Below, in pieces: positions 13,901 through 36,132 of a stretch of 64,000 nucleotides of DNA. The position numbers and the translations under genes are program-made. Position 1 is the stretch's first letter; each line of letters opens with the position of its first letter. Location of the stretch: positions 62,001 to 126,000 of IMG/VR virus record IMGVR_UViG_3300032516_000001; one strand, given 5' to 3'. Under the pieces are notes generated by a model. It saw only the letters and a list, made by a program, of their open reading frames with translations. It ran no database searches and was not told where the DNA came from.

Positions 13901-15515
13901 TTAGTCGGGAACCTGGACCGCGACCTGGAGCGGCGGTGTTCCAAAGGACGTTGATATTATATGGAGCGATTGCTACCTGTAACGGATCAGTGACTGATGA
14001 TCCGTTACCTGGAACTTGAACAGCTGCTGAATAGCGTTCGGTAATAACAGAGTCAGACCATGTACGGCGATTGCCGCTTGGGCCATCGAGCCGGCTTAGA
14101 CCGCCAACAAATATTGTGCTGTCGGTAACTCTATCACCATAAAAAACAACTGGGCCAGCCGAAAAAGTTGATCCGAATCGTTTCCATGTGGTGCGCAAAT
14201 TTCCGCGCAAAAGTTCGATCAAATTGGTACGTAAAATTGAATCATAATCAAATTTATCGGCAATTGAATGCCGTAAATCTAGTATATCAGTTAATGTGAC
14301 CTGATCTGAAAATAGTCCGTCAGGTCTAACAGTATATAAGGTAAGCTCCGTCCCTATATTATGTGCTCTGATCGTTGTCTGTAACTGTCCACGATCAACT
14401 GTGACGACATAATTCAAGCCAACCTGGACAACGCTATTTATACGGATTATTTCGTCATCAATTCTAAAATAAGCTTCACCATATGAATTGATCGTAGACA
14501 ATACCGTTCCGGTTATGCTAGCTAGAGTAAATTGTGTATCAACTTCTGCAAATACCGCAGGAAGAGATATGCCGCTTGTAAATTCAGTAGCGTCATTACG
14601 AGTAATGGCAACACTGTTTCGATCGAATGCACCAGCTATATTGCCAACATCTGAAAATCCGGCGCTATTACGTCTGAATACGGCACAAATTGGGATCGCG
14701 TAAACGTACCCATCGACAGTTCCTAAAATCGCCGGATCCCCGGTTCCAGCTCTCCACAAACCGGGGTCGCCCAATTCATTCCGCATATTAGTAAAGCATA
14801 AAGCACTCGGCGCTGATAAAGCTCCTTGAGCGAATACGAGGGTTGAATCAAACCCTTCTGGATATTGTGATATACTGACATTTGGAACTGTCCTAATTCT
14901 ATATTGGATTTGAACCCGCTTTGTAGTCTCATAATTAATGTCAGGGTCTATTAGATCATCGGCGAGATATGAAAATCCGCCTTCGACATTACCAAACCGG
15001 TACAAAAATCCGCGTTGAGGTTTGCCCGGGGATACAGTTGGAGGAGCAGGATCGACATCAATTCTCTGAAGCCAAACCTCGAGGAATGCGAATTCTGCTT
15101 TATTTCCGCCTACTGAATTGTTAGAAGGATTGAGTAATATTTTATTGTGAGTATCAACATTATTTGGGGCTAATGGCGGAGCTCCAGTATTGGTGCCGGT
15201 AACTGGAATGACCCATCCATTTACTATTGCCCAAACAGGATTCCGTGTTTCTCCTGAAGTATTTCTACCGAAATAAAAGAAATTGGATCTATCGGGGTCA
15301 GTATTGAAATCCTCCCGTGGATTGGATTCATTGAGCAACCATCCGGATGGGAAAGTGGAACGTACGGCTTCCGCACGAGCCTCTAATTCCATCAATCCGA
15401 ATAAATTTAATTCTGAATCCAGAGGGGGGCGAGTGGACTCCCATACGACAGCAGCCAGTTGCTTATCGCGACCATCGACATATCGAGAAACACCAGGACC
15501 AAGAGGATTAGGCAT
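10902..15515 (-). CDS. large virion structural protein (tail/baseplate-associated), paralogue of 17394..20051
   Basis: 1537-aa beta/Pro-rich ORF in tail module; shares [20 protein letters not shown] and RPDGLFSDQ blocks with 17394..20051. Confidence 0.7.
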   Translation of the reverse strand: MPNPLGPGVSRYVDGRDKQLAAVVWESTRPPLDSELNLFGLMELEARAEAVRSTFPSGWLLNESNPREDFNTDPDRSNFFYFGRNTSGETRNPVWAIVNGWVIPVTGTNTGAPPLAPNNVDTHNKILLNPSNNSVGGNKAEFAFLEVWLQRIDVDPAPPTVSPGKPQRGFLYRFGNVEGGFSYLADDLIDPDINYETTKRVQIQYRIRTVPNVSISQYPEGFDSTLVFAQGALSAPSALCFTNMRNELGDPGLWRAGTGDPAILGTVDGYVYAIPICAVFRRNSAGFSDVGNIAGAFDRNSVAITRNDATEFTSGISLPAVFAEVDTQFTLASITGTVLSTINSYGEAYFRIDDEIIRINSVVQVGLNYVVTVDRGQLQTTIRAHNIGTELTLYTVRPDGLFSDQVTLTDILDLRHSIADKFDYDSILRTNLIELLRGNLRTTWKRFGSTFSAGPVVFYGDRVTDSTIFVGGLSRLDGPSGNRRTWSDSVITERYSAAVQVPGNGSSVTDPLQVAIAPYNINVLWNTAAPGRGPGSRLNGAAPWWWNGDKIQINIAEFRAGLPVTDSDQVRFILPSEDPDAILIHFEGMTTDPNGGVPFSTTTPTASNPNTPIAGNRILKNGQGIAVSLDGSGNLIIELNSDATIPPVVPATPFQEFGDAVPVIALDTAVSTVMHVEFAVVYGAGRGLSHKPDYIHTAHYRGDPTNSSKVMLRPGLSDRSRLIPTYLNESPCIQTGTNRNLSRTSDMMVDPGSKTIHIAPYRNILVPAVVFRDGNRLNWDPMGNYWGAMPTRDQSGINVVHTTVDPLSLFWNGPGATVYAEIPLNFLPKPGLHHVPIIPVTNAIFPSGINFVLMSKEGPFGASNSSDWNRGLVSYPAATPGYYIVTPVVGETYGTGALPSIFGKKYTNNKLRSVNGGPFKGIQFPPFYAPARITGVYKRSIPALVPTSSPFNLDRVFVGGVGTDVNLLRDDFDGPTFLLDVDVNGDLYFILNSDVIDLTKSTPGTTFDNSEFLIECTLFGFDRGFLETNGRVLNTRDWIIAANDFIDTSDSRVGVIAPAPLSLYATNNEVTIYYSRQPYQGDVFGSQNAYSDDVQRLGPLAISEATSLKLNPLGPVSTLSMPNKVGYEVLTATNFVTSLGTGRLSGSVPIKLLNTVENPNGAPDYTGTLPDLNRRFSLNRVGFEDWVTPKFPVTDASVLTRPSIKRGAMSEIFDRDMNTEFAGCVSHLPLGSYFRDKDFIGKTLYQTRSTSNIGMITQGAISFPPYQAPANPATAGNSTWEGTEFICGQTNGASGAGGEVIIKVDGTSSFSDITKFKTARGGAGWSLTEPWPGGAISSRLPKARPNSEVGSVLVGTAYLVRSQPELFNNIEVHPGHELQMVIVTQATPAYFRDTDILHSANGTNEGFTALDRFRIWGRPIEKRRAQLDVSTATLTDKPLFVNNIYDDPIFYGSSDMNLASLKQELLPITVNGQTVFTLSNRPIDPTTVMLFVRGVKLVYGIDYTVGGITDQTVTYIVSGSNPPLLTTDTLEAWFMLL

Positions 15516-16362: not shown

Positions 16363-17394
16363 TCAACTTGCTCCTATATAGACTTGATGCACCGTGCATT
16401 TCCATTCAAATGAATTTTGAGTTCCTCCTTCGATACCCGCGCACGTGATCGATAAGCATTTATTTGTGTCATCAACATTTAGCACTACAGTGGCCGCAAC
16501 GAGCGCAGCGTCCGTCGAACCTCCGTCGTAGGCTATTGAACCCACAACGTAACACGTTCCACCCATTTGCTTGACGCCAGATCCAATACTCCATGTGGTG
16601 ACTTTGCCAGCGTCAGTTCCACCAAGGCAGACACCAACGAGTTCAACGGGATCATCGTCTATACTAGATCCATAGAGATAGACTTCAGGTGATGAACCAG
16701 GAGTACCAGCGGGACCAGTGTAACCAGTGACGCCATCAGGACCAATGGGACCTGTGTAACCAGTGACGCCGTCAGGTCCAACAGGCCCGGTGGCTCCTGT
16801 AACGCCATCAGCCCCCTGCGGTCCGGTGGCGCCTGTGACACCGGGCAATCCTTGTGGTCCAGTGGAACCAGTAACTCCAGCAGGCCCTGTAACGCCTGTA
16901 ATACCAGGATCTCCCTGTGGACCAGTTATCCCAGTTATCCCGGGGGAACCTTGTGGTCCAGTGGAACCAGTTATGCCTATCGGACCTGTAACGCCATCGA
17001 TCCCTGTGGCACCTTGAGGACCAGTGGCTCCTGTAATACCATATGGGCCAGTTGATCCTGTAACACCATCAATTCCTGTGGCACCTTGAGGACCAGTGGC
17101 TCCTGTAATACCATCAGCGCCCTGTGGCCCAGTGTAACCTGTGACACCATCTGAGCCAGTAGGACCGGTGGCTCCTGTGACGCCATTGGCGCCCTGTGGC
17201 CCAGTATAACCAGTTACGCCTATTGATCCTGTTGGACCAATAACTCCTGTAACACCTTCAGACCCAGTAGCACCTTGAGGACCGACAGGGCCCGTTGAAC
17301 CGCCACCTCCACCACCAGGAGGCCCTGGTTCACCGATAAGGCTACCAGGTCCTGAAACCAGTGCAGGGTTCACTTCACTAAATGGTCGTGGCAT
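16363..17394 (-). CDS. collagen-like (Gly-X-Y) fibre protein
   Basis: about 200 aa of [10 protein letters not shown] triplets plus C-terminal beta domain. Confidence 0.85.
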
Positions 17395-20051
17395 TAGAAC
17401 ACCGTCCTTTGCGGATTAATTAAATGCCCACGCACTCGATAAACGGCAGCAGATGATGAACTCAGTATTGAATTTAATTGAATAGTATTTTGATCATCGA
17501 ATTCCAGCCAATTGGTTAAAATAACTAAAACTAATGTTCCCTTCCTTCCAATGCTTGGCACATCTTCTGCTAGCTCCATTAAAACTGGGGAAGCTACCTT
17601 ATGCCGTTGTTTAGCTGTGAGGAGGTGACCGAATACAACAGGAGAATAAACTGGCGTTACGCCATCATCGGATTTTGGCCAAAAATGCCGACCATCACCA
17701 TCAGTTACAATATCTGGAGCTGATTTGTAGAGAGTTACGATGGCATCTGGAAAATATGGAACTTTGGCATCTAATTTAATAAAGCCAGTATTTATTCCAA
17801 ATCCGATGATGCTAACTGGATTCGGATTATCCAATCTGGATTCTGGGTATGTCGAAGATGGTAGTAACCCGACTGGAATTTGTGCACTCGGTGATTCAAA
17901 TGGAAATGAATCATCAGGACTACCAGATCCACTTGTTATTACATAAATATTGTCCGGATTAGTTCTTGGTATCAAATGAAGAGTTTCAGGAGCCATGCCC
18001 CCGGATGCAGGCAGTAATGATTGAATAGCTCGAGATTGATAAAATACTTGATATGAATCATCCGGTGGTGGTCCAACCATAGGAAGCGGTCGGTAAGCAT
18101 AATAATTAGCTTGTACCCATGGATAGGGCGGACCTGGTGGTACTGGCAAAGGAAAGGTTAATGTTACTTCAGTGTAAGCGGTATTGAATGTGTAATTTGT
18201 AGTTGGATATGGCGGATTTATGCCGTCAGTAATTAAGATTGGATCAGTTATTTTATCGGGGATATAAATATGAATTCCATCGGTACATATACAAGGGTTT
18301 GCTATCATTTCTATTGTTTTAAGTCTAATGAACGCTTCCCTATGGGGTTTATCTATCGCCCATAAGGTGGAATCTAGACTGAATCTGTTTGCATCAGAAG
18401 TAGCCGTAAACAGAGTAGCATCAACAAGTAGCACAGCACCATATAATGCATCGATATCTGCCGCGCTCGGGGTCCACACAGCATGATCATCAATAACGTT
18501 TCTGGATAATCCATTCCCAGCAGGATATTCAATGGCAACTTCTACGTAAATATCTGTAGTTCCGTTATAACTATAACCTGGGGGGATCAAATTTATAGTA
18601 GCAATATCAATCGGACCGCCAGGTACTGATGCCGAGTATTGAATGTCCGATACGCCAGTTCCAGGAATCGGAGACGCAAGCATGTCAATTTCATTCAATA
18701 ACACAGATTGATCTACTAATCTAACTTTATTTACTGATACAATATTGGTCCCTGCTGGCGCAACAGACAACAAGTTGAAAGGCGCAAACCATAACTTAAA
18801 TGCTGACAAATCAACCTGAACGGAAAGTATCGGCCATACTCCGGGCGGCCACGGAAAATGAAAATGACAAACTATAGTTTCGGTTATGCTTCGATCACTA
18901 AAATATTGGCGGACGCCATCAGTGTTTATTATGCTGTCCTGGACAGACAATGATGTGCCACCAGGACCTGCTGGTATTAAAATTTCGTGCTCTGTGGAAA
19001 GTGAGTTATTAAATATTTGCTGCACAGCTTTTTGAATGGTTTCGCCATAATCACGAGCAGAACCTTTGCGAAGATCCTTAATATCGCTAATAATAATTTG
19101 ATCTGAGAATAATCCGTCAGGTCTATCAGATGCACCGGCTACAATCAGTGCGCCGCCATTTATGTTGGTTGTCCTATCATATGCAGTGTTGTTCCGTCGA
19201 AATACGGCACAGATCGGAATAGCATACATATAGCCATCAACAGTGCCTAAAGCAGCAGCATCAACTGCAGTTCCAGTTCCTGCTGCCCAGAGACCGGCAT
19301 CATTCGTAACTGGGGAATAGGTGTATGCCGTTGGAGTACCATCGGCCCCGGGTCCCGTGAAATCCGATACGGTATTGGCTGTTACTGATGGATCATCTAA
19401 CCCATCCGGGTATGTATTCGGATCGATGCCACCAATTACTCGATATCGATATTGAATTTGAACACGAGCACTTGTTTCAGCAGCCTCGGTTGGATCGATT
19501 AAATCATCTGCGAAATTCGGGGTCGTATCAGGGGATTTAACATTCCCATGTCTAAAAATTAAGCCCCCGGCACTTTTATTTGCTACTGATGGAACAGCTA
19601 ATACAAGTGCTCGCCACACTTCTAGAATGACCAAATCAACTCTGTAACTCCCTATACCCACAGGAGGCATGGGGAGATTTATAATATTGGTAGAAGTAGA
19701 ATCTGAGCATTGAAATTTAAGATTCCAGCCATTAACTATTAAATTCTGCGGACTGATTAAAAATATATTTTCGGCCCCTGGTAATGGGACAGGAAAAGAA
19801 TATGCATTACTAATATCTGGACTATCAAGAAAACCAGGATTTATCCAACAGGATGGTAACTGTCTACTATTGGAAAGTCTTACACCATGATCGGAAGTTA
19901 TCTCACTTCGTAAATTCATCTCCCAGTCAATGACTGGTTTGGTCGTTTGGATAACTACCGATTCAAAGGATTTCTCTTCACCGGAGAATTGATCTCCAGG
20001 CATTCCTTGTGGGAGTTGACTAACACCAATACCAAGGTTCTTGTATGCCAT
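17394..20051 (-). CDS. virion structural protein, paralogue of 10902..15515
   Basis: shared blocks VNGW, LEVW, ADDLIDP, RVQIQYR, GLWx[33 protein letters not shown]. Confidence 0.7.
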
Positions 20052-20196: not shown

Positions 20197-20394
20197 CTAA
20201 TCTTCCATTACTGATTCTATTATAGTCTGATCGCAATCCTTAATGGGTCTTTCATTCTGGTTTATGGGATAATCTGACATTTGTCCGCATCTATCACAGA
20301 TTAATACGCCTCCAGTTTCCTGATATGAACTAGTATCGATTTTTATATATATGTCACTCCCGCAATACCTATATAACCGCCATTGATGTGCCAT
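20197..20394 (-). CDS. small hypothetical protein with CxxC (start probably MAHQW at 20394)
   Basis: ICDRCG motif; the ORF-track start at 20424 lies inside the post-tmRNA hairpin, so the downstream ATG is preferred. Confidence 0.5.
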   Translation of the reverse strand: MAHQWRLYRYCGSDIYIKIDTSSYQETGGVLICDRCGQMSDYPINQNERPIKDCDQTIIESVMED

Positions 20395-20407
20395 ATCTAA
20401 ATAAAGC

Positions 20408-20452
20408 GACGAGGCGCTGACCATTGGGGGGAGGACGGATCAGCGCCTCGTC
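20408..20452 (-). terminator. stem-loop directly after the tmRNA CCA end (terminator or processing hairpin)
   Basis: 13-bp perfect stem GACGAGGCGCTGA/TCAGCGCCTCGTC followed by GCTTTATTT on the minus strand. Confidence 0.7.
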
Positions 20453-20791
20453 TGGTGGACCCGGGGGTATCGAAACCCCGTCCGCAAAGTTCCGAATTCG
20501 TCTTCTACGTGCGTATCTGGTGAGACTGCACCAGCACAATATCGCCGAAGCGCGACTCCATCACCTGCTGTTTCTCATCCTATGTCGCAGGAATTCATAG
20601 GACCAGTTCGTGTACTCACGCCAGTAGCACTACTCGAACTCCTCATGCTACCAACGGCGTCACGGTTTCTTAGGCCGCGACGCGAACAGCATTGTCATTC
20701 GCTGCTATTGGTTGCTTGCTTGGTCATGGCAGGGCAAGCACTGCCAGCACGCAGACGTCTTCTTCCCTCCACGTCGAAACCTGTCGGGCCC
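20453..20791 (-). ncRNA. ssrA: tmRNA (339 nt), tag peptide ANDNAVRVAA* at 20702..20670
   Basis: 5' GGGCCCGACAGGTTTCGAC pairs with 3' CGGGTCC-A-CCA with G3.U70 Ala determinant; T-arm GGGGTTTCGATACCCC; pk1 TGGCAG/CTGCCA + TGCTTG/CAAGCA; helix 2 TGCGTGC/GCACGTA; tag ORF GCG AAT GAC AAT ... GCG GCC TAA. Confidence 0.95.
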
Positions 20792-20794
20792 TTT

Positions 20795-22564
20795 CTAACA
20801 TAACTTACAATCAAAACCCGAAACAGTTACATTCCGTTTTAACATGAACTTGATTTTTTCTTTACCAAATGACTTGTGATAATTATGCTTATCTGCATAT
20901 TCCTTTTCTTTCATACTCATTTTACATGCCCTGTTATACAATGTCTTCTTGTGTAATATGAACCCGTCTTCCCCGATATAATAATAATCTGGACGAACTA
21001 TTCCTATTTGATCCCAATTTGCAGCTTTGTATATGGTCCCAAAATGACCATAGGTTTTATCAGCGAATGAAACTAGACACACAATCTTACCAAAATTCGG
21101 ATCTTGGAAAATAGACCTGGAAATTCTGGATAGAAACCAAGAAGCGAAATTCTTCTTCTGATATCCAGGGTGTATGCAAAAACGATCAAGTTCCAAAACT
21201 TGTCTCGGATTTATATTCATGGAAGTGGCCACTTCCTCTCGTATTACAGACGAAAACTTACATATGGCAATGCATTGTGATTCAAGAAAAGCCCCGTATA
21301 TTATTTTTGAAGACCTCCCGAAAGCAGCATAATGATATGAGTTTAGGAAATCTACAGCATCACCAGCATTAACTGTAAAAATTCTGATGTCTGATAAATT
21401 GAATTGTTTCTGCTCAATTTCTGGTTCATGGCCGACAATGAAGTTATTGATCTTTGATGTGATGGCATGTGGATTGGAAAATTCATGTTCATACAAATAC
21501 AAAATTCTTGCAGATGGATCAAATTTCTCTAAATAAGTATACTTGGATGCATCTCTACACTGTCTATTAGGCAATGAGTGCCAATATTCCCCTTGACATT
21601 CTATGTATACATTATGATCGGGTAAGAAATAATCAAATAAATATGGCCCGATTGGAACCTGAGATTTATGTTTGATTTGCACACTATTAAGAATTAACTC
21701 AGTAATTTTCTCGATAGACGATTTTCTACCCATTTGAGCAGATCGGATCTTACCCATTTTTTCTCGAAATTTATCATCTTTCCATAATTCCTTACTTTGC
21801 AATATCTTCAATTCTCTATATTCCGGATCTTGCCATCTTCTCTTCAATCCAGAAACCACGGAATCTCTATATTCTGAATTATTCCATTTATTTTTTGCTG
21901 CTTTACAAGCTTTTATCTGAAATTCTGGATCTTGCCATTTGGTCTTAGCTATATTCGATAATTTAGTTTTATATTCTTCGGTCCGCCAAAGATCTTCGTA
22001 GTGTTTTCTATACTCTGGATCTTGCCATCTATCTTTTTGAAGCGTTTTTTGATGATCTTTATACCCTTCCCTTTGCCAAACCGATTTCTGTTGTTTAGAT
22101 TGATTATCTCGATATTCTTCATTTTGCCAAATCAGTGTTTGTTGTTTGGATTGATTATCTCGATATCCTTCTCTCTGTACAACTAACTTTTGTTTTTCTG
22201 ATTGTCCTGTTCTAAATTCTTTTGTTTTAAATTTTCTTTGATTTTCTATATATTCCGGAGTCTGCCACAAGTCTTTTTTTACTTTGATCTGATTTTCTCT
22301 AAATTTCGGATTTTCCCATAGTTCTTTAGTTCTATCAGACAATTGTTTTCTTCGTTCATCAGTATATACACGTTTCCTATTACACACACTGCATAATAAA
22401 ATACCACGTCTTTTAAGTCTCGCTTTTAAGCACAGAATTGATGTTATGATTGTGACATCACAATCATAACATCTTATTATAACATTTGATGAGTTATTCT
22501 GAGGCTGGCCAAACTGTGCTAAGGTCAAATCCCAAACAATATGTTCTTTTATATTTAATTCCAC
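20795..22564 (-). CDS. fusion protein: CxxC..CxxC + 17-aa W..PEYR repeats + Vsr/DUF559-like endonuclease + Mom-like GNAT DNA-modification domain
   Basis: SSIE...FDYFLPDHNVYIECQGEYWH...RDASK (Vsr/DUF559 pattern); FLNSYHY, VLELDRFC, NFASWFLSR, LVSFADKTYGHFGTIYKAANW (Mom-family pattern). Confidence 0.75.
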   Translation of the reverse strand: MELNIKEHIVWDLTLAQFGQPQNNSSNVIIRCYDCDVTIITSILCLKARLKRRGILLCSVCNRKRVYTDERRKQLSDRTKELWENPKFRENQIKVKKDLWQTPEYIENQRKFKTKEFRTGQSEKQKLVVQREGYRDNQSKQQTLIWQNEEYRDNQSKQQKSVWQREGYKDHQKTLQKDRWQDPEYRKHYEDLWRTEEYKTKLSNIAKTKWQDPEFQIKACKAAKNKWNNSEYRDSVVSGLKRRWQDPEYRELKILQSKELWKDDKFREKMGKIRSAQMGRKSSIEKITELILNSVQIKHKSQVPIGPYLFDYFLPDHNVYIECQGEYWHSLPNRQCRDASKYTYLEKFDPSARILYLYEHEFSNPHAITSKINNFIVGHEPEIEQKQFNLSDIRIFTVNAGDAVDFLNSYHYAAFGRSSKIIYGAFLESQCIAICKFSSVIREEVATSMNINPRQVLELDRFCIHPGYQKKNFASWFLSRISRSIFQDPNFGKIVCLVSFADKTYGHFGTIYKAANWDQIGIVRPDYYYIGEDGFILHKKTLYNRACKMSMKEKEYADKHNYHKSFGKEKIKFMLKRNVTVSGFDCKLC

Positions 22565-22583
22565 ACATAACTATACATTCGAA

Positions 22584-23246
22584 CTATGAACTTACGCGCC
22601 AGGTCCATCCAAGAGTACTTGTCGCTGGTTTATTTATAACTTTGAACGTGACGTAATTAACTAATGCGTCTTTCACCCTAACGTCTACAGTTGGATCATA
22701 TAACCCATTAGGTGGTAATATCGGATTTGTAATCGCCATATTCGTATCAATATCGCCGCCAAGTAATCCCATTTCTACCAATGGACCAACCGCTTCTGAT
22801 TCCGCAAATATTGTAGTGTAATCAACTACATTAGTCGGTTTTGCACTAATAGCCCCAAAGCTATCAATAAAATTAGATGTGGCGACTTGCTTGCGTCCTA
22901 TTTCATCATAAAGGGACCGTTGAGTAGGCTGACCGGATGGTGGGTTCATTGGATCCCAACCAACATCGCCGATCCCAACAGCCAAAGCATAAATTCCAAA
23001 TTTTGGCTCCGATACATTAGCCACCACTCCAGATTTCAGGAGCCTGGCAACTAATATACTAGCATCAATAGTAATGACATTCGTTATGTGACCTTGATCT
23101 TGGATTTCTCCGGTTTTCCCATCCCGCATAACCCAAAATACTTCACCTCTAAGTGATGGTATGCGTTCATGGCCATTGAAATGCATATTCATTCTCAAAT
23201 CCGAGTCAACACATTTGCGAATTTGTTCCTTCATCATACTAGTCAT
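22584..23246 (-). CDS. tail/baseplate structural protein (fibre-anchor type)
   Basis: AVGIG...SLYDEIGRK...FAESEAVGPLVEMGL...TFKVINK...WTWRV pattern typical of myovirus tail-fibre attachment domains. Confidence 0.6.
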   Translation of the reverse strand: MTSMMKEQIRKCVDSDLRMNMHFNGHERIPSLRGEVFWVMRDGKTGEIQDQGHITNVITIDASILVARLLKSGVVANVSEPKFGIYALAVGIGDVGWDPMNPPSGQPTQRSLYDEIGRKQVATSNFIDSFGAISAKPTNVVDYTTIFAESEAVGPLVEMGLLGGDIDTNMAITNPILPPNGLYDPTVDVRVKDALVNYVTFKVINKPATSTLGWTWRVSS

Positions 23247-28672: not shown

Positions 28673-31222
28673 TCAATAGATTGGGTTGCCTGCTTCATCA
28701 GTCAAATTTATTGCTACGACTGTGTATGAAACAGGTCCCATGTTAATTACTCGTACTGAGGCTCTATCACCACCTATCCAGTCTGCTTCCTTCTGAAGAA
28801 TACCACCTCCTGAAATGGTTAGGTTTGATAAAGATAACGGGAGTTTGCACATTTCTTTAGAGAAAAATACCTCCACAGCATCAGATCCAAACCTCATTCC
28901 ATCCACATTCCCAATAAGCCCTATTCTTGGTATTGCTGATGCTACAGATGGTCTTATAGCCAACCCGATAAATGATGATGTGAAATTAAATCCATGAAAA
29001 AAATCCGTACCAGCATATCCATAATTGGAAAATGGTGGAGGATCACCAAATAAATTATCGTGATATGTATCTTGAAGAGTACCAGAAATTGTATATATCT
29101 CCCCATTTATCATTGAATCGACATCAACAACTATTGTATCATTAATAGGGGCAGAAATCACCCTAAATCCGCGGACTCCATGCGGACCAATCCTAGCTAT
29201 ATGATCCGAACAAACTCGCCTCATATCAGATACTAAATTAGACAAAGATCCAATGTCGGTGGCATCAACCGCTTGCACGATATCGGAATCTGCACATTGC
29301 CAATGCTCAGATGAATTGAGCATATGTCTATTTAGCTTAAATTTGAAACTATTTGCTGCAATAATAATGCTGGGTAAATCAGTATGATGAGCATATTCAC
29401 CGGAAGATGCGAAATCCGAACCGTCTACATATCTATGCATAAGTGGAGGCCACGATAGGTGAAAATCATATGCTTTCACGATATTATTCAAGGCCCACAT
29501 CGATACTGGCAGTGAAGTAATGATATGAGATCTAGTTGCAATAGGTTCATCATCCACTTCAGCTTGGATAGATCCTGGAAGAACGATTTCACGATCAAAT
29601 AAAATAGATGCTGATATTTCAGGTTCAACCAAAATAGATTGTACTCGAGCCGTTCCAATACCTCGCGAACGTGCAGTAATACTACCAGTGTAATTAGCAG
29701 GAGATGTTATACTGAATCCATCTTCACTTGTTACAGTGGCCTCAAGTCGTACTGAAGGGATGTTGGATCGCATTATGAAACGTAAATCGGCGAATAACGT
29801 ATAAGGTCCACGAGTTTCAAATGCCATGTTCGGTGCACCATAACTCGCAAAAACTGCTATTTGATTTATCGGTGAGCCATATGCTGAGCTAAATGAAAGC
29901 GGATATTCGGTCAATAATACATGATTATTATATGCTAATTTTAGACCTATGTTCGGTGGATTTGGTGTATAGCCAGCGAACACACCGCAAGCAATTACTA
30001 AAATAGGATCCGTATAAGATCCGAAGACATCTCTAAAAGTCATGGTATTAATGCTATCATCATATAGATGAACCCCGGCCTGATGCAAGTGATTTATATA
30101 TTTTCTCTGTACTTCATTTACTAGATTGTAAGCAGTGGTGGCATTAGTTGCATCGGCCATCGTGATACGATTAACAGTATCCATATTGGCATGAACAAGA
30201 TCTGAAGAAATGTGCGCATTAAAATCAGCTTTGAATTCATTTACTATAGTTATTAACACTGATAAAATTGACCAACTAAAAATCGGAGAAGTTACTTCAT
30301 TAGCAGTGTCCGCTACAATATGCACCCCGCTTTGATATGCCGCCCAGTTAATTTGAGTATCAGCGTCTAATACTGGTCCATTGAAATAAACTCGTACCAC
30401 TCCCGTGTTGAAATAATCATTACTAACATCTGATACATAAGCATCAATGATTTCAAGTTGAGTCAAACTAGTATAGCTATATGGTAAAGGCGCTCGCGAT
30501 GCCAACGTTAAAGGAACAGTTCCAGTTGCAGTATTTAAAGACCAATCAGTGACTCCAATAAAATCGATAACAAATGAATTAGCCGCCGGCATGCCTCCTG
30601 GTAATTGCACACGAAAAGTCGTTTCAGGTATGCCTTCAGCAGCCCATGGTAATAAAGCCATGGCCACCCCAGGGCCGGGAATACTGGCATCTCGGATGGT
30701 GAATGTTGCCGGTACTATTGCTGATTCGGTCGTTGGACCCACAGACCGATCAAATAAGATGTCAACACATCCGCGTTCTGATTGCCAGGCACCAATAACC
30801 ATTGGCGGGTCTATCACATTAGCATCAAAATTTTTAGCTCCCGATATGATCTCTTCTCCTAAAATACTAAGCACGCCGGCCGTGCCCAAAGAATATGATG
30901 TTCCTGTAGTTAATGGTTGAGCTAAATTCAATACTACGGACCAATGATCAGCATCGTAAAAATCAACTGAATTAATAGTCGGTATTATGGCTATAGGTGG
31001 AGCTGGTGGTACTGTAGGAACAGTCAATGTTAAGATATAATTTACAGGATTGAGAGCTGTATCTGTCAATTCATCATTGTAATAAACACGAACTCTTTTG
31101 GAAGATATTTGATGAACATTAAAATCAAATGTTCCTGGACCAGATGATAAAAATACCGCTCCAGGTACGATTCTGCCAAATCTAGAGCTTGGTAGCCCCA
31201 ATCTCCCGGTTAAAGCAACCAT
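28673..31222 (-). CDS. virion structural protein with Ig-like domains and His-pair repeats
   Basis: VRVYY/VDILFDR/VRVYFN/VEVFFS Ig-like strands; two clusters of the same His repeat as 23250..28652. Confidence 0.7.
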   Translation of the reverse strand: MVALTGRLGLPSSRFGRIVPGAVFLSSGPGTFDFNVHQISSKRVRVYYNDELTDTALNPVNYILTLTVPTVPPAPPIAIIPTINSVDFYDADHWSVVLNLAQPLTTGTSYSLGTAGVLSILGEEIISGAKNFDANVIDPPMVIGAWQSERGCVDILFDRSVGPTTESAIVPATFTIRDASIPGPGVAMALLPWAAEGIPETTFRVQLPGGMPAANSFVIDFIGVTDWSLNTATGTVPLTLASRAPLPYSYTSLTQLEIIDAYVSDVSNDYFNTGVVRVYFNGPVLDADTQINWAAYQSGVHIVADTANEVTSPIFSWSILSVLITIVNEFKADFNAHISSDLVHANMDTVNRITMADATNATTAYNLVNEVQRKYINHLHQAGVHLYDDSINTMTFRDVFGSYTDPILVIACGVFAGYTPNPPNIGLKLAYNNHVLLTEYPLSFSSAYGSPINQIAVFASYGAPNMAFETRGPYTLFADLRFIMRSNIPSVRLEATVTSEDGFSITSPANYTGSITARSRGIGTARVQSILVEPEISASILFDREIVLPGSIQAEVDDEPIATRSHIITSLPVSMWALNNIVKAYDFHLSWPPLMHRYVDGSDFASSGEYAHHTDLPSIIIAANSFKFKLNRHMLNSSEHWQCADSDIVQAVDATDIGSLSNLVSDMRRVCSDHIARIGPHGVRGFRVISAPINDTIVVDVDSMINGEIYTISGTLQDTYHDNLFGDPPPFSNYGYAGTDFFHGFNFTSSFIGLAIRPSVASAIPRIGLIGNVDGMRFGSDAVEVFFSKEMCKLPLSLSNLTISGGGILQKEADWIGGDRASVRVINMGPVSYTVVAINLTDEAGNPIY

Positions 31223-34200
31223 TAGTCGTGGTAAATCTCCAGACGGGCCATATAAACCACTACCGCATCTGAGCCGGTGGGACCAGTGGCTGAACTACCA
31301 AGACTGACCTGAACCTCATAATCTTGTTCCCCAGCGAAAGTCAAATCCGGTGACTTTATATACGTAGGAACACTACTAGTTGTAGCTAGTATCGAATTAC
31401 TAACAAATGTTCCAACCCCGACATCATAGAGCCGAGCGGATCCAGTCAATCCCGACGAAGACCCGAAGTATGCGGCGAATTGAAGATGTTGATTACCTCC
31501 AGTTGGGACCGTCGGTCTATAGTCTGCAGGATCAAATCGAAGAGCACCAACAGTTATATATCCGGTAGCAGAAGAAGACTGCGGGCCGGCAACCCCTATG
31601 ACATAGTGCTTTCTAGCAATTGTTTGTATTATATATCCGGTAAATCCGCCACTAGGACCTGTATACCCAGGAAGTATAATCCCCTTCAGTCCATCAATAG
31701 CTCCCTGTACATTAGTAAAACCAAACGCGGGAAGTGTATCGACAGCTGAAATCAGATCAGCAGAATCGCCCCCAGATGGACCAGTCGCCCCAGTTACTCC
31801 ATCGATTCCTGTTGCGCCTTGGACCCCCGTAGCGCCTTGTGGTCCTGTCGCACCAGTTGCTCCGTCAGGACCAGTGGCTCCAGTTACCCCGCCAATCCCA
31901 GTAGCGCCTTGTGGCCCTGTAGCACCCGTCTCACCTTGTGGTCCTGTTGGTCCAGTAGCTCCTGTTACGCCATCAACGCCTGTCGCGCCTTGTGGACCTG
32001 TCGAGCCCTGCGGACCCGTCGCTCCAGTTACTCCTCGTGGTCCAACCAATTCGGAAGATATCGCTGATTGAAGAATCGAAGGGGAATCGCTAACGATATC
32101 CCCGGACTCCATATTTGTCATGCCGCCGTTATAACCTGACGGACCACTATCCTTTATAGTTGGATATGTATCGCCATCGCCCATTCTCCACCAGGCGACC
32201 AAATTTGGCGGAGCATCGGCTCTATTTACTGCTTTGCCAGTAGCAAGCCACGTTACTTCCGTGCTAGTCAGTACTCTATTATAAACAGTTATTTCGTCAA
32301 GATTGCCTGGGAATGGTGCATAACCCATGCCTGGCACTGCTCCTGCAATCGTAGCACTGGCTGTATTTAATATACTTTGAGTTAGATTACTTTGAATAGT
32401 AAGTATCCCAGTTATAGATCCGTCTATGTAGAATTTAACACCACTAGCGAGTGAAGTCCCCGCGTAGGTGACAACACAATGATGCCAAGTTCCACTGTTT
32501 AAAACTGACACATTATCAGTTACGTATAATTGGCTATTATCGGCCCCGTTCAAAAAAAGAAAAAAGCATCCACTTCGATTACCAACCGCATAACCCGGAT
32601 AGTAAGTGGGCCCATTCTGCATCTTTGCAAAAAATCCATAAGAGTAATTGGTGGTTTTAACCCATAGAGATATAGAGAACGAATCCGTGCGCTCAAAATT
32701 GAGCACATTACCTAGAACCACATATTCATCAGTACCGCCAAAGAGAATGGATTTTTCAGAATTTCCCGCAACGCCCTTCGCACCTGTAGGACCAGTTACG
32801 CCAGTGGATCCTGCCGGTCCTGTGGCACCTCGCGGTCCAGTTGGACCAGTCGCTCCAGTAACACCCTGGGAACCGGTAACGCCTTGCGGGCCTGTTGGTC
32901 CAGTGGCTCCAGTTACTCCGTTGATTCCTGTAGCACCTTGCGGGCCTGTTGGTCCAGTCGCTCCGGTTATTCCATCAATACCCGTAACGCCTTGTGGTCC
33001 AGTGGCTCCTGTCTCCCCCGCGGGTCCTGTTGGTCCAGTGACGCCGGTAACTCCGTCAACACCTGTGGCGCCTTGTGGTCCTGTCGGCCCCGTGGCCCCG
33101 GTAACTCCATCAACGCCTGTTACGCCTTGCGGCCCCGTCGCACCTTGCGGGCCTGTGACACCTGTGACACCGCCGATTCCAGTAGCACCTTGTGGTCCTG
33201 TTACACCTTGTAAACCCGTTGCGCCTTGTGATCCTGTTGGTCCTGTAGCCCCGGTTATTCCATCAATACCCGTAACGCCTTGTGGTCCAGTGGCTCCAGT
33301 TACTCCTGGAGATCCTTGTGGGCCGGTAGACCCAGTTACTCCGTCAACCCCGTTAATTCCTGTCGGTCCAGCAGGACCCGTAGCCCCAGCAGGACCCGTA
33401 GCCCCAGCAGGACCCGTTGGACCAGCAGGACCCGTTGGACCAGCAGAACCCGTTGGACCAGCAGAACCCGTTACTCCGTCAACCCCGTTAATTCCTGTAG
33501 CGCCTTGTGACCCTGTGGCTCCTATCCCCCCCGTGGGTCCTGTTGGTCCAGTAACGCCGGTAATGCCATCAATTCCTGTAGCACCCTGTGGTCCAGTGGC
33601 TCCGGTTGCTCCATTAGGACCTGTTGGACCAATAGCTCCTGTGGCACCACCAGGTCCGGTCGCCCCGGTTACTCCGTCAATTCCTGTGGCCCCCTGTGGA
33701 CCCGTAGGACCTGTAGCACCAGTTGCTCCATCAGGACCCGTAGGACCTGTGATTCCTGGAGATCCCTGAGGACCAGTAACACCAGTTGCTCCATCAGAAC
33801 CAGCGGCTCCAGTGACTCCTGGAGATCCCTGTGGGCCAGTAGCCCCCTCTGGGCCAGTAGTTCCTGTGACCCCGGGTGATCCTTGCGGTCCTGTAGCTCC
33901 AGTAATTCCATCAGAACCTGTAGCACCTGTAACACCATTAGACCCCGTCGCGCCTTGTGGTCCTGTCGCTCCAGTGACTCCTGGTAAGCCTTGTGGTCCT
34001 GTCGCTCCAGTAACACCGTCCGGCCCTGTTGGTCCACCATAAGGACCCGTTGCGCCCTGCGGACCAGTAGCTCCGATTACTCCCGGCTCTCCTTGCGGAC
34101 CAGTAGCTCCGATTGGACCTGTTGGACCAGGTGAACCCTGTGGACCCTGAGGACCAGTTGGTCCACCATAGGGTCCCGTAGCACCGACGGGACCTGTTTC

Positions 34201-36132
34201 TCCTTGCGGGCCGGTCGGACCTGTTGCCCCATCTGGACCTGTAACTCCAGTGACTCCAGGACTACCCTGTGGGCCAGTAGCTCCAGTGACGCCAGTAACT
34301 CCATCGATTCCAGTTGCTCCGATAGGGCCTGTTGCTCCTACTGGTCCAGTTGCACCTGTAACTCCATCAACACCAGTGGCTCCGATAGGACCGGTAGATC
34401 CAGTTACGCCATCGATACCGGTAGCGCCCTGTGGGCCAGTCGATCCCGTGACTCCATCGATACCGGTCGCGCCAATTGGCCCTGTCGGTCCAGTCGCACC
34501 TGTGACGCCATCGATCCCTTGAACACCAGTGGCGCCTATTGGGCCAGTCGCTCCTGTAACGCCATCAATTCCTGTGGCACCTTGTGGTCCTGTCGATCCT
34601 GTAACTCCATCTATACCAGTCGCGCCAATCGGCCCGGTTGGACCAGTAGCTCCTGTAACTCCATCGATTCCTTGAACCCCGGTCTCGCCTTGAGGACCGG
34701 TCCAACCCGTCTCACCAGCTGGTCCCGTTGGTCCAGTAGCGCCTGTAACACCGTCTATACCAGTTGCTCCTTGAACACCAGCCCCTGTAGCACCTGCCGG
34801 TCCCGTCGCTCCGGTAACACCAGCTATTCCTGTAGCACCTTCAGCACCGGCAGGTCCTGTGGGTCCCATTGGGCCTTCCGGACCAGTAGGACCTATTGGC
34901 CCGGTAACTCCATCAGGACCTGCCGCTCCTTGTGGTCCTGTAACGCCTGTAACGCCAGTATAGCCTGCTGGTCCTGTCGGTCCGGGCGCGCCTGTAACAC
35001 CGTCCGCGCCTGTTGCGCCTTGGATCCCATCGGGTCCGGTTGCTCCTGTAACTCCGTCGTTACCTGGTAACCCTTGGACGCCGGTTTCACCTTGTATACC
35101 TGTGACACCATCTGGTCCCGTTGCACCTGTAATGCCTGGTGATCCTTGGGGACCAGTTGCTCCTGTTACACCAGGACCCCCCTGCGGACCTGTTGAACCA
35201 GTAACACCTTGTGGTCCTGTAGCGCCGGTTCCCCCTTTCGGTCCCGTTGATCCGAAAATTCCTTGTGAACCTGTGGCCCCACGCGGCCCGGTTGATCCTG
35301 TGACACCGGTTGCACCTTGGGGGCCTGTAACTCCTATACCCGTAGCCCCTTGCGGGCCAGTTCCACCTTGTGGGCCAGCAGGACCAGTAACCCCCTGCGG
35401 TCCCGTAGAACCAGTAACCCCCTGCGGTCCTGGAGGACCACCAAATGGTCCAGTAGCTCCTGTAATCCCATCTGGTCCAATTGCGCCAGTTACACCAGGT
35501 GATCCCTGTGGACCGGCAGTACCAGTTGCGCCATCAGGGCCGGTGGCTCCTGTGACTCCAGGCGATCCCTGCGGTCCTGTAGCTCCGATAGTTCCATCAG
35601 GTCCCGTTGCGCCTGTAACACCTGGGGATCCTTGAACACCTTGGGGCCCCGTAGAACCAGTAACCCCCTGCGGTCCTGGAGGACCACCAAACGGTCCAGT
35701 AGCGCCTTGTGGTCCGGTGGGACCAGTAGTCCCTGTGACACCAATAGGGCCCGTTGATCCTGTAACTCCAGGAGATCCTTGTGGTCCGGTGGCTCCAGTA
35801 ATACCGGGACTACCTTGCGGTCCCACCGGACCAGTATGGCTTGAAATATCAAATGCAAATTGTGATAAACCGCCGGCAGTCAATACGTGGGTTACAATTG
35901 ATCCGAATGTATGAGCTGCGGCAAGTGTACCCTCTATATGTCTAACAATATCAAATACATTGCCGGCTACCCCGGTAACGAGCATTAACTCATTATCTAT
36001 TTTAATACGGAATTGAGGTAACGGAGGAAATAATGCAGCACTGGCAACTGTAACACTAAGAGCAACTGGACTTATACCGCCCAGTTGATCTATGGTCGTC
36101 TGTGCTGTGTTTGCGAAACGTTCGGTAGGCAT
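31222..36132 (-). CDS. giant collagen-like fibre protein with internal LamG/concanavalin A-like domain
   Basis: about 1000 aa Gly-X-Y; then FSISLWVK...WHHCVVTY...FYIDG...[12 protein letters not shown]...LVAWWRM (LamG); second collagen block; C-terminal beta domain. Confidence 0.88.

What the first reader, a model, noticed from the sequence alone, without database searches (positions are those of the whole stretch)
20795..22564. Single-chain nuclease + Mom-like DNA hypermodifier: candidate non-methyl restriction-modification or self-protecting homing system
Seen: one ORF joining a Zn-finger-like N-terminus, a repeat array, an apparently intact Vsr/DUF559-type PD-(D/E)xK nuclease (D311, E322, YWH) and a Mom-type GNAT domain (ELDRFC, SFAD..GH.GTIY.A.NW). 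Established: Mu Mom converts adenine to N6-(1-acetamido)adenine and blocks restriction. Inference: a shared DNA-recognition arm could direct both cleavage of unmodified DNA and protective modification, analogous to type IIG R-M enzymes but with acetyl-CoA chemistry. Alternatively it is a homing element carrying an anti-restriction cargo. It has its own promoter-like motif and forms an island with the tmRNA inside the structural operon.
Basis: partly seen in the sequence, partly recalled or inferred. Interest (0 to 1): 0.78.

Follow-up and report, generated by a model that had tools for sequence, protein, structure and literature searches.

The report
Hef-type homing nuclease with Mom-like domain
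This gene in a roughly 323-kb phage encodes a known type of selfish DNA-cutting enzyme (a Hef-like homing endonuclease) that always carries a Mom-like domain. It is an ordinary member of a large family, though no one has yet tested what that domain does.

Summary
They are a CxxC..CxxC zinc ribbon, about twelve 17-residue helical repeats, an intact Vsr-fold nuclease and a Mom-family GNAT domain. A genuine tmRNA starts 3 nt after the stop codon.

The nuclease belongs to the EDxHD homing-endonuclease family (I-Bth0305I). The nuclease plus Mom-like cassette is the architecture of Hef-like homing endonucleases, found here in hundreds of sequence clusters, mostly on large phage contigs.

Copies at this intergenic site form their own clade. 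The gene is missing from the sister genome of an occupied one, and a paralogue sits beside DNA polymerase. This is the pattern expected of a site-specific, dispensable, free-standing endonuclease gene.

Its acetyl-CoA premise is outdated, because Mu Mom uses Gly-tRNA(Gly).

The Mom-like domain is the best-conserved part of the protein and keeps six of seven Mom active-site residues. The essential R151 is replaced family-wide by Thr. The domain is therefore functional, but its chemistry is unknown.

The tmRNA linkage is specific to this lineage, and the "own promoter" is no better than chance. Verdict: new member of a known kind.

The parts
20795..22564 (-). Whole ORF, 589 aa, GTG start: Hef-like endonuclease (zinc ribbon + repeat arm + EDxHD nuclease + Mom-like GNAT)
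22361..22564 (-). Residues 1-68: zinc-ribbon / treble-clef-like module with C32, C35, C58, C61
   Evidence: The four Cys are at least 90% conserved. A beta-hairpin plus helices is modelled at pLDDT >80. AFDB relatives are named treble-clef zinc finger proteins.
21734..22360 (-). Residues 69-277: about 12 helical repeats of 17 aa (W-x-x-P-E-Y-R type), the presumed DNA-binding arm
   Evidence: This is the least conserved part of the family. It is only 24% identical to the arm of the intragenomic paralogue, whereas the alignment covering the catalytic cassette is 42% identical. DNA binding is inferred, not shown.
21425..21733 (-). Residues 278-380: EDxHD (Vsr-fold) nuclease domain. Catalytic residues and codons: E285 (21710-21712), D311 (21632-21634), H329 (21578-21580), D338 (21551-21553).
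   Evidence: 3r3p Z 13.8, 1cw0 Z 12.3. Profile against 3r3p E 1.8e-12 with the motif residues aligned. Conservation.
20798..21424 (-). Residues 381-589: Mom-like GNAT domain. H411/Y412, R461, S475, D502 and Y512 correspond to Mom H58/Y59, R111, S124, D149 and Y159. T504 and H507 replace Mom R151 and R154.
   Evidence: Pfam PF25680 72.8 bits. 8bv8 Z 17.1. Residue mapping. Most conserved domain.
20453..20791 (-). Phage-encoded tmRNA, tag peptide ANDNAVRVAA. Starts 3 nt after the ORF's stop codon, so probably co-transcribed with it.
   Evidence: ARAGORN. Rfam RF00023 106 bits. Sequence.
20408..20452 (-). 13-bp GC-rich hairpin followed by a T-rich run, directly after the tmRNA 3' CCA. Terminator-like end of the Hef-tmRNA unit.
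20197..20424 (-). 75-aa ORF of unknown status between the tmRNA and the 885-aa gene. It belongs to the variable slot downstream of the endonuclease gene.
   Evidence: No PHROG hit. No counterpart in L006, L014 or L015.
22584..23246 (-). Upstream flank: conserved 220-aa gene. Its stop lies 19 nt before the endonuclease start.
   Evidence: Homologues flank both occupied and empty sites.
17394..20051 (-). Downstream flank: conserved 885-aa gene of the large-protein, probably virion, module.
22440..22473 (.). 34-bp perfect palindrome (16-nt arms, 2-nt spacer) inside the ORF's own zinc-ribbon codons. Role unknown.
   Evidence: It is the longest short-range perfect inverted repeat in the 64-kb window.

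Best explanation
This is a free-standing, site-specific endonuclease gene of the Hef-like class. It sits in the late large-protein (virion) gene string of a ~323-kb phage, between a 220-aa gene and an 885-aa gene.

Proposed working of the protein:
- The N-terminal zinc ribbon and about 12 helical 17-aa repeats hold a long stretch of DNA. This is inferred.
- The EDxHD (Vsr-fold) nuclease, probably as a homodimer like I-Bth0305I, cuts the matching locus of related phages that lack the gene during co-infection.
- Recombinational repair then copies the gene and its neighbours, here a tmRNA, into the cut genome or excludes the rival's markers. This is inferred from Hef of phage U5 and other T4-type free-standing endonucleases.

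The C-terminal Mom-like domain is a constant, strongly constrained partner of the nuclease, so it has a function. My preferred reading, at about 40%, is that it is an active acyl- or aminoacyl-transferase. It would act on DNA held by the same arm and mark the carrier's own site so that the nuclease spares it. It would use a donor or geometry different from Mu Mom, because Mom's essential R151 is Thr here. The main alternative for this domain is given as rival 1.

The gene is a long-term, occasionally lost resident of this phage group, not a recent arrival.
For: Shown here:
- Nuclease fold and all EDxHD motif residues are present.
- The protein is colinear with annotated Hef-like homing endonucleases across nuclease plus GNAT.
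- The family is large: 392 word-index hits, and 635 clusters at 50% identity with E<=1e-30. Almost all of the 150 listed matches span both the nuclease and Mom-like parts of the profile.
- There are several copies per genome. A 504-aa paralogue lies beside DNA polymerase A about 5.5 kb beyond the window. Campylobacter phages have 5-10 places per genome.
- Copies at the 220/885 site (window, L006, L007, L019) form a 100/100 clade. It is separate from copies at a sigma-factor site or the polymerase site.
- Presence is patchy. L014 has an empty site but is sister to the occupied L019 (support 99/99 and 91/94). L015 is also empty.
- In the paralogue comparison the alignment covering the catalytic cassette is 42% identical, but the arm is only 24%, so the arm is the variable, specificity-type part.
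- The Mom-like domain is the most conserved region, with 42 columns at 90% or more against 19 in the nuclease and 2 in the arm.
- H58, Y59, R111, S124, D149 and Y159 equivalents are kept in at least 93% of 232 fused proteins.
- GC and GC3 of the gene track each host genome. Divergence between the window and L006 copies (47%) equals that of the flanks (41-60%). Both point to long residence.

From the literature:
- Hef-type proteins belong to the EDxHD family, and I-Bth0305I is a dimeric homing endonuclease (PMC3239194).
- Hef of phage U5 cleaves nrdB (PMC2988022).
Against: No cleavage, homing or modification has been measured for this protein or any close relative.

Long co-divergence with the flanks is also what a domesticated, phage-beneficial gene would show.

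The empty-site DNA (L014, 64% GC) is too diverged to define a target or insertion boundaries.

For the preferred role of the Mom-like domain:
- R151, whose Ala mutant is dead in Mu Mom, is never Arg in 232 fused proteins.
- The Mom dimer residue W48 is not kept.
- Classical Hef-likes of T4-type and Campylobacter phages have lost further Mom residues, with Y59 changed to Leu and D149 to Asn in one of them. The domain can therefore persist without a full Mom active site.

Inter-domain geometry in the model is uncertain (pTM 0.60).
Confidence: 0.72

Rival explanations
1. Pure homing endonuclease. The Mom-like domain is a non-catalytic DNA-binding or base-flipping clamp that helps recognise or position the target. 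The carrier genome is immune simply because its site differs in sequence.
For: Mom's essential R151 is replaced by Thr or Ser in the whole fused family, and W48 and W181 are not kept. Classical Hef-likes have further active-site losses yet retain the domain. Mom's HTH-like insertion, proposed to lie in the major groove (PMC13219725), is retained and highly conserved here, including P525, H538 and K539. Free-standing phage endonucleases normally rely on target-site sequence polymorphism (general knowledge of T4 Seg and Mob enzymes).
Against: Six of seven Mom active-site positions, including the catalytic Ser and Arg, are at least 93% conserved across 232 diverse proteins. A new invariant His (H507) appears beside the Thr. 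That looks like a remodelled active site rather than a relic. The domain is more conserved than the nuclease itself.
Confidence: 0.35
2. Single-chain, non-methyl restriction-modification weapon (Iyer et al. 2021). The Mom-like domain modifies adenines across the phage genome. The nuclease degrades unmodified host or superinfecting-phage DNA at short, frequent sites.
For: This is a published prediction for jumbo-phage Mom-REase fusions (PMC7824862). Both domains are under strong purifying selection. The gene is a long-term resident. It lies within a late-type operon, and mom itself is expressed late (PMC13219725).
Against: The nuclease is of a family whose characterised members, I-Bth0305I and Hef, are homing enzymes with long targets (PMC3239194, PMC2988022). 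A ~200-residue variable arm argues for long, paralogue-specific targets. Paralogue clades are tied to particular genomic sites. The gene is dispensable in close relatives. Several paralogues per genome would be redundant for a genome-wide modifier. R151 is lacking.
Confidence: 0.15
3. Homing element carrying an anti-restriction cargo. The Mom-like domain protects phage DNA from host restriction as in Mu and is functionally unrelated to the nuclease, which only provides mobility.
For: Mom-family membership. Mom's known role in restriction evasion (PMC13219725).
Against: The fusion is obligate and ancient across hundreds of clusters and all paralogues. That is not expected for a separable cargo. 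Stand-alone Moms keep R151 in 110 of 110 sequences, whereas fused ones never do. This indicates a different function.
Confidence: 0.08
4. tmRNA-coupled system. The Mom-like domain uses the adjacent alanine-charged tmRNA, or another tRNA-like RNA, as acyl donor, so gene and RNA form a functional pair.
For: Mom uses an aminoacyl-tRNA as donor (PMC13219725). The tmRNA starts 3 nt after the stop codon and shares a terminator-like hairpin.
Against: No tRNA or tmRNA was found next to the homologues in eight other distinct genomic contexts. Three of these are at the same site: L006, L007/L008 and L019/L020. The other five are the polymerase-site paralogue (L009-L011), two sigma-factor-site copies (L021, L022) and two classical Hef loci (L016, L017). 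The slot downstream of the gene holds unrelated cargo elsewhere, such as HU genes, a 207-aa ORF or nothing.
Confidence: 0.03

Closest known systems
Hef and Hef-like free-standing homing endonucleases (phage U5 Hef; T4-like Proteus/Shigella phages; Campylobacter Eucampyvirinae; LIMEstone; PA5oct)
   Same: The cassette is colinear: an EDxHD nuclease followed by a Mom-like GNAT domain. Copies are free-standing between conserved phage genes, and there are several per genome. PHROG 3339 and 559 cover most of the protein.
   Different: Identity is only 24-28%. This clade keeps a near-complete Mom active site, whereas the classical Hef-likes examined have HL for HY and, in one of them, N for D149. 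The N-terminal arm differs: one zinc ribbon plus 17-aa repeats here, against tandem CxxC modules in Campylobacter Hefs.
I-Bth0305I (PDB 3R3P), prototype of the EDxHD homing endonuclease family
   Same: Same catalytic fold (Z 13.8) and the same motif residues: E170/D196/H213/D222 correspond to E285/D311/H329/D338 (PMC3239194). The DNA-binding region is N-terminal to the nuclease in both.
   Different: I-Bth0305I is intron-encoded, 266 aa, has NUMOD2/HTH motifs and no GNAT domain (PMC3239194).
Bacteriophage Mu Mom (PDB 8BV8), Gly-tRNA(Gly)-dependent adenine N6 carbamoylmethylase
   Same: Pfam family PF25680. Top structural match at Z 17.1, including the HTH-like insertion. H58, Y59, R111, S124, D149, Y159 and H183 are conserved.
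   Different: R151 is Thr, R154 is His, and W48 and W181 are not kept, all family-wide. The domain is fused to a nuclease rather than standing alone. There is no com-type translational regulator. Activity is untested.
Jumbo-phage Mom-REase fusions predicted as momylation-based restriction-modification (Iyer, Anantharaman, Krishnan, Burroughs, Aravind 2021)
   Same: Same architecture and same type of genome.
   Different: That paper assumed an acyl-CoA donor and a restriction role. It did not address the site-specific paralogue clades, the patchy presence or the R151 replacement shown here.
Type IIG / IIL single-chain restriction-modification enzymes
   Same: Nuclease and DNA-modifying domains sit on one polypeptide, with a candidate shared DNA-recognition part.
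   Different: Those use a SAM-dependent methyltransferase and a dedicated target-recognition domain, and they recognise short motifs. Here the partner is a GNAT-fold domain, there is a long repeat arm, and neither modification nor modification-sensitive cleavage has been shown.

Membership tests
EDxHD (I-Bth0305I / Hef) homing endonucleases | Vsr-like catalytic fold | tested here: met
   Model residues 280-379 against 3r3p Z 13.8 and against 1cw0 Z 12.3. Family profile against 3r3p E 1.8e-12.
EDxHD (I-Bth0305I / Hef) homing endonucleases | Conserved E, D, H, D catalytic residues | tested here: met
   E285, D311, H329 and D338 align with E170, D196, H213 and D222. They are invariant or at least 90% conserved in 85 homologues.
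EDxHD (I-Bth0305I / Hef) homing endonucleases | Separate DNA-binding region N-terminal to the nuclease | tested here: inconclusive
   A zinc ribbon plus 12 helical repeats is present. It is not NUMOD2/HTH, and DNA binding was not tested.
EDxHD (I-Bth0305I / Hef) homing endonucleases | Site-specific cleavage of the gene-less allele and gene conversion (homing) | not testable with these tools
   Only indirect evidence exists: site-specific paralogue clades, and an empty site in the sister of an occupied genome.
Hef-like endonucleases (nuclease + Mom-like GNAT) | Colinear match across both domains to annotated Hef-like proteins | tested here: met
   tblastn residues ~265-564 to Hef-like CDSs. PHROG 3339 covers residues 102-577. 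Alignment A2. BFVD and AFDB hits named Hef-like or homing endonuclease.
Mom family (PF25680) | Pfam model above the gathering score | tested here: met
   72.8 bits against a cut-off of 27.1, residues 393-562.
Mom family (PF25680) | GNAT fold with the Mom-specific HTH-like insertion | tested here: met
   8bv8 Z 17.1, model 390-580 against Mom 37-224. The insertion region is highly conserved.
Mom family (PF25680) | Active-site residues H58, Y59, R111, S124, D149, Y159 | tested here: met
   H411, Y412, R461, S475, D502 and Y512. Each is conserved in at least 93% of 232 fused proteins.
Mom family (PF25680) | Essential R151 (R151A is inactive in Mu Mom) | tested here: not met
   T504 in the window protein. 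The position is Thr in 213 of 232 fused proteins and never Arg. It is Arg in 110 of 110 stand-alone Mom homologues (PMC13219725).
Mom family (PF25680) | Dimer interface residue W48 | tested here: not met
   No Trp at this position in the fused family. It is Trp in 79 of 110 stand-alone homologues.
Mom family (PF25680) | Gly-tRNA(Gly)-dependent formation of N6-carbamoylmethyl-adenine in dsDNA | not testable with these tools
   Needs biochemistry. Only stand-alone Mom homologues were screened in PMC13219725.
Single-chain restriction-modification (type IIG-like logic) | Nuclease and modification domains on one chain | tested here: met
Single-chain restriction-modification (type IIG-like logic) | Modification by the same protein blocks its own cleavage | not testable with these tools
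   No data. This is the decisive experiment.
Vsr mismatch-repair endonuclease / DUF559 | Pfam Vsr or DUF559 model above the gathering score | tested here: not met
   DUF559 scores 14.1 bits against 20.6, and MTES_1575 scores 15.1 against 38.2. There is no Vsr hit. The fold is shared, but the family is EDxHD.

The most novel reading that the evidence does not exclude
The Mom-like domain of Hef-type endonucleases may be a catalytically active, site-directed DNA acyl- or aminoacyl-transferase. The family-wide R151-to-Thr and R154-to-His switch would reflect a donor or adduct different from Mu Mom's glycine. Tethered by the same repeat arm as the nuclease, the domain would mark the carrier's own target and make it immune. 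That would be a homing endonuclease with built-in, non-methyl, tRNA-dependent self-immunity: a true hybrid of homing and restriction-modification.
Probability: 0.3. Interest if true: 0.7.

Novelty: new member of a known kind. Interest (0 to 1): 0.35.

Why it matters
As an annotation it is routine. It is one more Hef-like endonuclease gene in a large phage that also carries a probable LAGLIDADG intein and a second Hef-like paralogue.

The useful residue is a sharper question. Hundreds of phage endonucleases carry a Mom-like domain that is more conserved than the nuclease, keeps Mom's catalytic Ser, Arg and Asp, and has systematically replaced the essential R151.

It is now known that Mom uses aminoacyl-tRNA. 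Asking whether these fused domains modify DNA, and whether that gives self-immunity, is therefore a direct and cheap experiment. A positive result would reveal a new DNA modification and a new way for selfish nucleases to spare their carriers. The variable 17-aa repeat arm might also be of interest as a modular DNA-binding scaffold.

Tried and rejected
- Megablast of window 15-30 kb against GenBank phages found no match, so no named relative of the phage is available.
- A single-sequence PDB search with the nuclease domain alone gave only spurious sugar-binding-protein hits. The family profile was needed.
- The promoter scan was at chance level, so 'own promoter' was rejected.
- tmRNA linkage was rejected as a family trait.
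- Low GC as a sign of recent acquisition was rejected, because GC3 matches the flanks and the homologues track their own genomes' GC.
- DNA alignment of the occupied locus against the empty sites (L014, L015) was too diverged to define insertion boundaries or a target.
- The GerD and GBP_repeat Pfam hits in the repeat arm are compositional and sub-threshold.
- A search for further copies of the palindrome half-site in the window found none beyond the palindrome itself, at chance level.
- Sandegren et al. 2005 (the original Hef paper) and Iyer et al. 2009 were not in the library. Statements about Hef's activity therefore rest on secondary citations (PMC2988022, PMC3239194).
- Foldseek against PDB with the whole model was swamped by GNATs. 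VIA-align wide recovered the nuclease matches.
Full report
**What is there**

The window is the reverse complement of part of a 323,057-bp metagenomic contig (ENA ERZ27248201, k141_3054732). It consists almost entirely of minus-strand genes, many of them very large. Some of these have tail-fibre or collagen-like PHROG matches. No GenBank phage matches at the DNA level.

The ORF named in the finding is real: 20795..22564, minus strand, GTG start, 589 aa. It begins 19 nt after the stop of a conserved 220-aa gene. It ends 3 nt before a genuine tmRNA at 20453..20791, supported by ARAGORN and by Rfam at 106 bits. A 13-bp GC-rich hairpin with a T-rich tail follows the tmRNA directly. A 75-aa ORF of doubtful status and the conserved 885-aa gene come next.

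**Anatomy of the protein**

An AlphaFold2 model built on 85 homologues is confident (mean pLDDT 92). Its pTM of 0.60 means the domains are well defined but their mutual arrangement is not. The protein has four parts.

- Residues 1-68 form a small beta-hairpin and helix module. It holds four Cys (C32, C35, C58, C61) that are at least 90% conserved.
- Residues 69-277 are 13 consecutive helices built from about twelve 17-residue repeats with a W-x-x-P-E-Y-R signature. A 51-nt tandem repeat in the DNA shows that units have duplicated recently.
- Residues 280-379 superpose on the catalytic domain of the homing endonuclease I-Bth0305I (3r3p, Z 13.8) and on Vsr (1cw0, Z 12.3, rmsd 2.0). The family profile finds 3r3p by sequence at E 1.8e-12. 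It aligns E285, D311, H329 and D338 with that enzyme's E170, D196, H213 and D222, which is the 'EDxHD' motif (PMC3239194). These residues are invariant or nearly so.
- Residues 381-580 are a Mom-family GNAT domain. Pfam PF25680 scores 72.8 bits against a cut-off of 27.1. Mu Mom (8bv8) is the best structural match in the PDB at Z 17.1 and Foldseek E 4e-11.

**What family it belongs to**

The closest named relatives in GenBank phages are 'Hef-like homing endonucleases' of Campylobacter, Proteus and Shigella phages. The match is colinear over residues ~265-564, covering nuclease and GNAT together, with 5-10 copies per Campylobacter phage genome. PHROG families named homing or HNH endonuclease cover nearly the whole protein. 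BFVD and AlphaFold DB neighbours carry the same names, including one from Pseudomonas phage PA5oct.

Taylor et al. (PMC3239194) had already placed Hef-type enzymes in the EDxHD family. Hef of phage U5 is cited as cleaving nrdB (PMC2988022).

The family is large:
- The word-index search returned 392 proteins, many on contigs of 200-430 kb.
- The exhaustive profile search returned 635 clusters at 50% identity with E<=1e-30. Almost all of the 150 listed matches span both catalytic domains.

The architecture is therefore known and common.

**Is it a mobile, site-specific gene?**

Four lines of evidence bear on this.

1. The same genome has a 504-aa paralogue beside DNA polymerase A, about 5.5 kb beyond the window. 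In the two paralogues the alignment covering the nuclease-plus-GNAT cassette is 42% identical, but the arm is only 24% identical.
2. Homologues on other large contigs fall into clades that go with genomic sites. The window, L006, L007 and L019 copies all lie between the 220-aa and 885-aa gene homologues and form a 100/100 clade. Two copies after a sigma-factor gene and the polymerase-side paralogue form the other clade.
3. Presence is patchy. In L014 and L015 the 220-aa and 885-aa homologues are adjacent, separated only by 413 bp or by a 105-aa ORF, with no endonuclease gene. Yet L014 is the sister of the occupied L019 in trees of both flanking proteins, with support of 99/99 and 91/94.
4. The gene is not a recent import. 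Its divergence between the window and L006 (47% identity) equals that of the flanks (41-60%). Its GC and GC3 follow each genome, at 0.34 in this 41% GC phage and 0.49-0.54 in phages of 50-54% GC.

This is the picture of a long-resident, dispensable, site-bound free-standing endonuclease gene. It does not distinguish continuing homing from a domesticated role in phage-phage competition.

**The Mom-like domain**

Mom transfers glycine from Gly-tRNA(Gly) to N6 of adenine in dsDNA, followed by an on-base rearrangement. Its key residues are W48 (dimer), H58, Y59, R111, S124, D149, R151, Y159, W181 and an HTH-like insertion (PMC13219725).

I aligned Mu Mom, 110 stand-alone homologues and the C-terminal 215 residues of 232 fused proteins.

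| Mom position | Stand-alone homologues (110) | Fused proteins (232) |
|---|---|---|
| H58, Y59, R111, S124, D149, Y159, H183 | conserved | each kept in at least 93% |
| R151 | Arg in 110 | Thr in 213, never Arg |
| R154 | Arg, Gly or Lys | His in 228 |
| W48 | Trp in 79 | no Trp |
| W181 | Trp or Phe in most (86) | Val or Ile in most (193) |

In the window protein the conserved positions are H411, Y412, R461, S475, D502, Y512 and H538.

The domain is the most conserved part of the protein. It has 42 columns at 90% or more, against 19 in the nuclease and 2 in the arm. By contrast, the classical Hef-likes of a T4-type phage and of Campylobacter phage CP30A have lost more. Both have HL for HY, and the T4-type one has N for D149.

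The domain in this clade is therefore certainly functional and looks like a remodelled active site. It fails one tested defining feature of a Mom-type enzyme, so I do not file it as a Mom orthologue.

**How it most likely works**

I commit to the following model:
- It is a site-specific endonuclease whose long, variable zinc-ribbon-plus-repeat arm selects the locus.
- Its EDxHD domain cuts related genomes lacking the gene during co-infection.
- Repair then spreads or favours the gene and its neighbours.

For the Mom-like domain I give about 40% to an active transferase that marks the carrier's own site. I give about 35% to a non-catalytic DNA-binding or base-flipping module. The remainder goes to genome-wide modification or anti-restriction roles. 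None of these steps has been measured; all are inferred from family membership, conservation and context.

**Side claims**

- The 'own promoter' is not supported: 13 sites against 13.3 expected, and none is placed to serve the gene. The gene is probably read through from the upstream operon.
- The gene and the tmRNA are plausibly one transcription unit, but the linkage is not a family trait. No tRNA or tmRNA lies next to the homologues in eight other distinct genomic contexts, three of them at the same site, nor at the two empty-site loci. The slot just downstream of the gene holds different cargo in different phages: two HU genes, a 207-aa ORF, or nothing.
- Phage-borne tmRNAs in very large phages are, to my knowledge, already described. 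I could not confirm this from a paper in the library.

**Verdict**

The object is a new member of a known kind. The remaining open question, what the Mom-like domain of Hef-type endonucleases does, is real and now easy to test, but it is not specific to this locus.

Noticed in passing
window 22440-22473: A 34-bp perfect palindrome (16-nt arms, 2-nt spacer) lies inside the endonuclease's own coding sequence, at the codons for the first CxxC knuckle. It is the longest short-range perfect inverted repeat in the whole 64-kb window (arm 16 against 9-11 in shuffles). It is absent from the homologues and the paralogue, and no further half-site copies occur. It forms a stable RNA hairpin. It could be a binding or autoregulatory site for a dimeric nuclease, an mRNA element, or chance.
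   Followed up: partly
window 33000-36000, within ORF 31222..36132 (-): A block of 57-60% GC sits in a 41% GC window. It is the collagen-like (Gly-X-Y type) repeat region of a 1636-aa tail-fibre-like protein, with PHROG tail fibre and collagen-like hits down to E 1e-272. The GC shift is compositional, not a foreign island.
   Followed up: yes
window 1256-4369 (-): A 1037-aa SNF2-family helicase gene has precomputed Pfam hits to LAGLIDADG_3 (weak) and Hom_end (faint). It is probably interrupted by an intein with a homing endonuclease, a second type of selfish nuclease in this phage.
   Followed up: no
L009 10001-11515 (same contig, about 5.5 kb beyond window position 1): A second Hef-like paralogue (504 aa) lies between DNA polymerase A and a DnaJ-like gene. 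The alignment covering its catalytic cassette is 42% identical to the window protein, but its repeat arm is only 24% identical. In a strain variant (L010) a GIY-YIG gene lies at the locus edge.
   Followed up: partly
window 20197-20791, compared with L006 11890-12162, L007 3865-4479 and L019 7899-8522: The slot immediately downstream of the endonuclease gene is a variable cargo position. It holds the tmRNA plus a 75-aa Cys-containing ORF here, nothing in L006, two HU-type DNA-binding genes in L007, and a 207-aa ORF in L019.
   Followed up: partly
window 22049-22194: A 51-nt tandem repeat (2.1-2.4 copies, 80% match) lies within the repeat arm. It corresponds to a recent duplication of the 17-aa units (near-identical YRDNQSKQQ stretches). 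Arm length evolves by unit gain and loss, and homologues range from about 330 to 760 aa.
   Followed up: partly
window 10902-15515 and 17394-20051 (-): The 1537-aa and 885-aa proteins share an N-terminal region of about 300 residues (33-34% identity in cross-matches between the window and L006 proteins). This suggests paralogous large structural proteins with a common N-terminal module.
   Followed up: no
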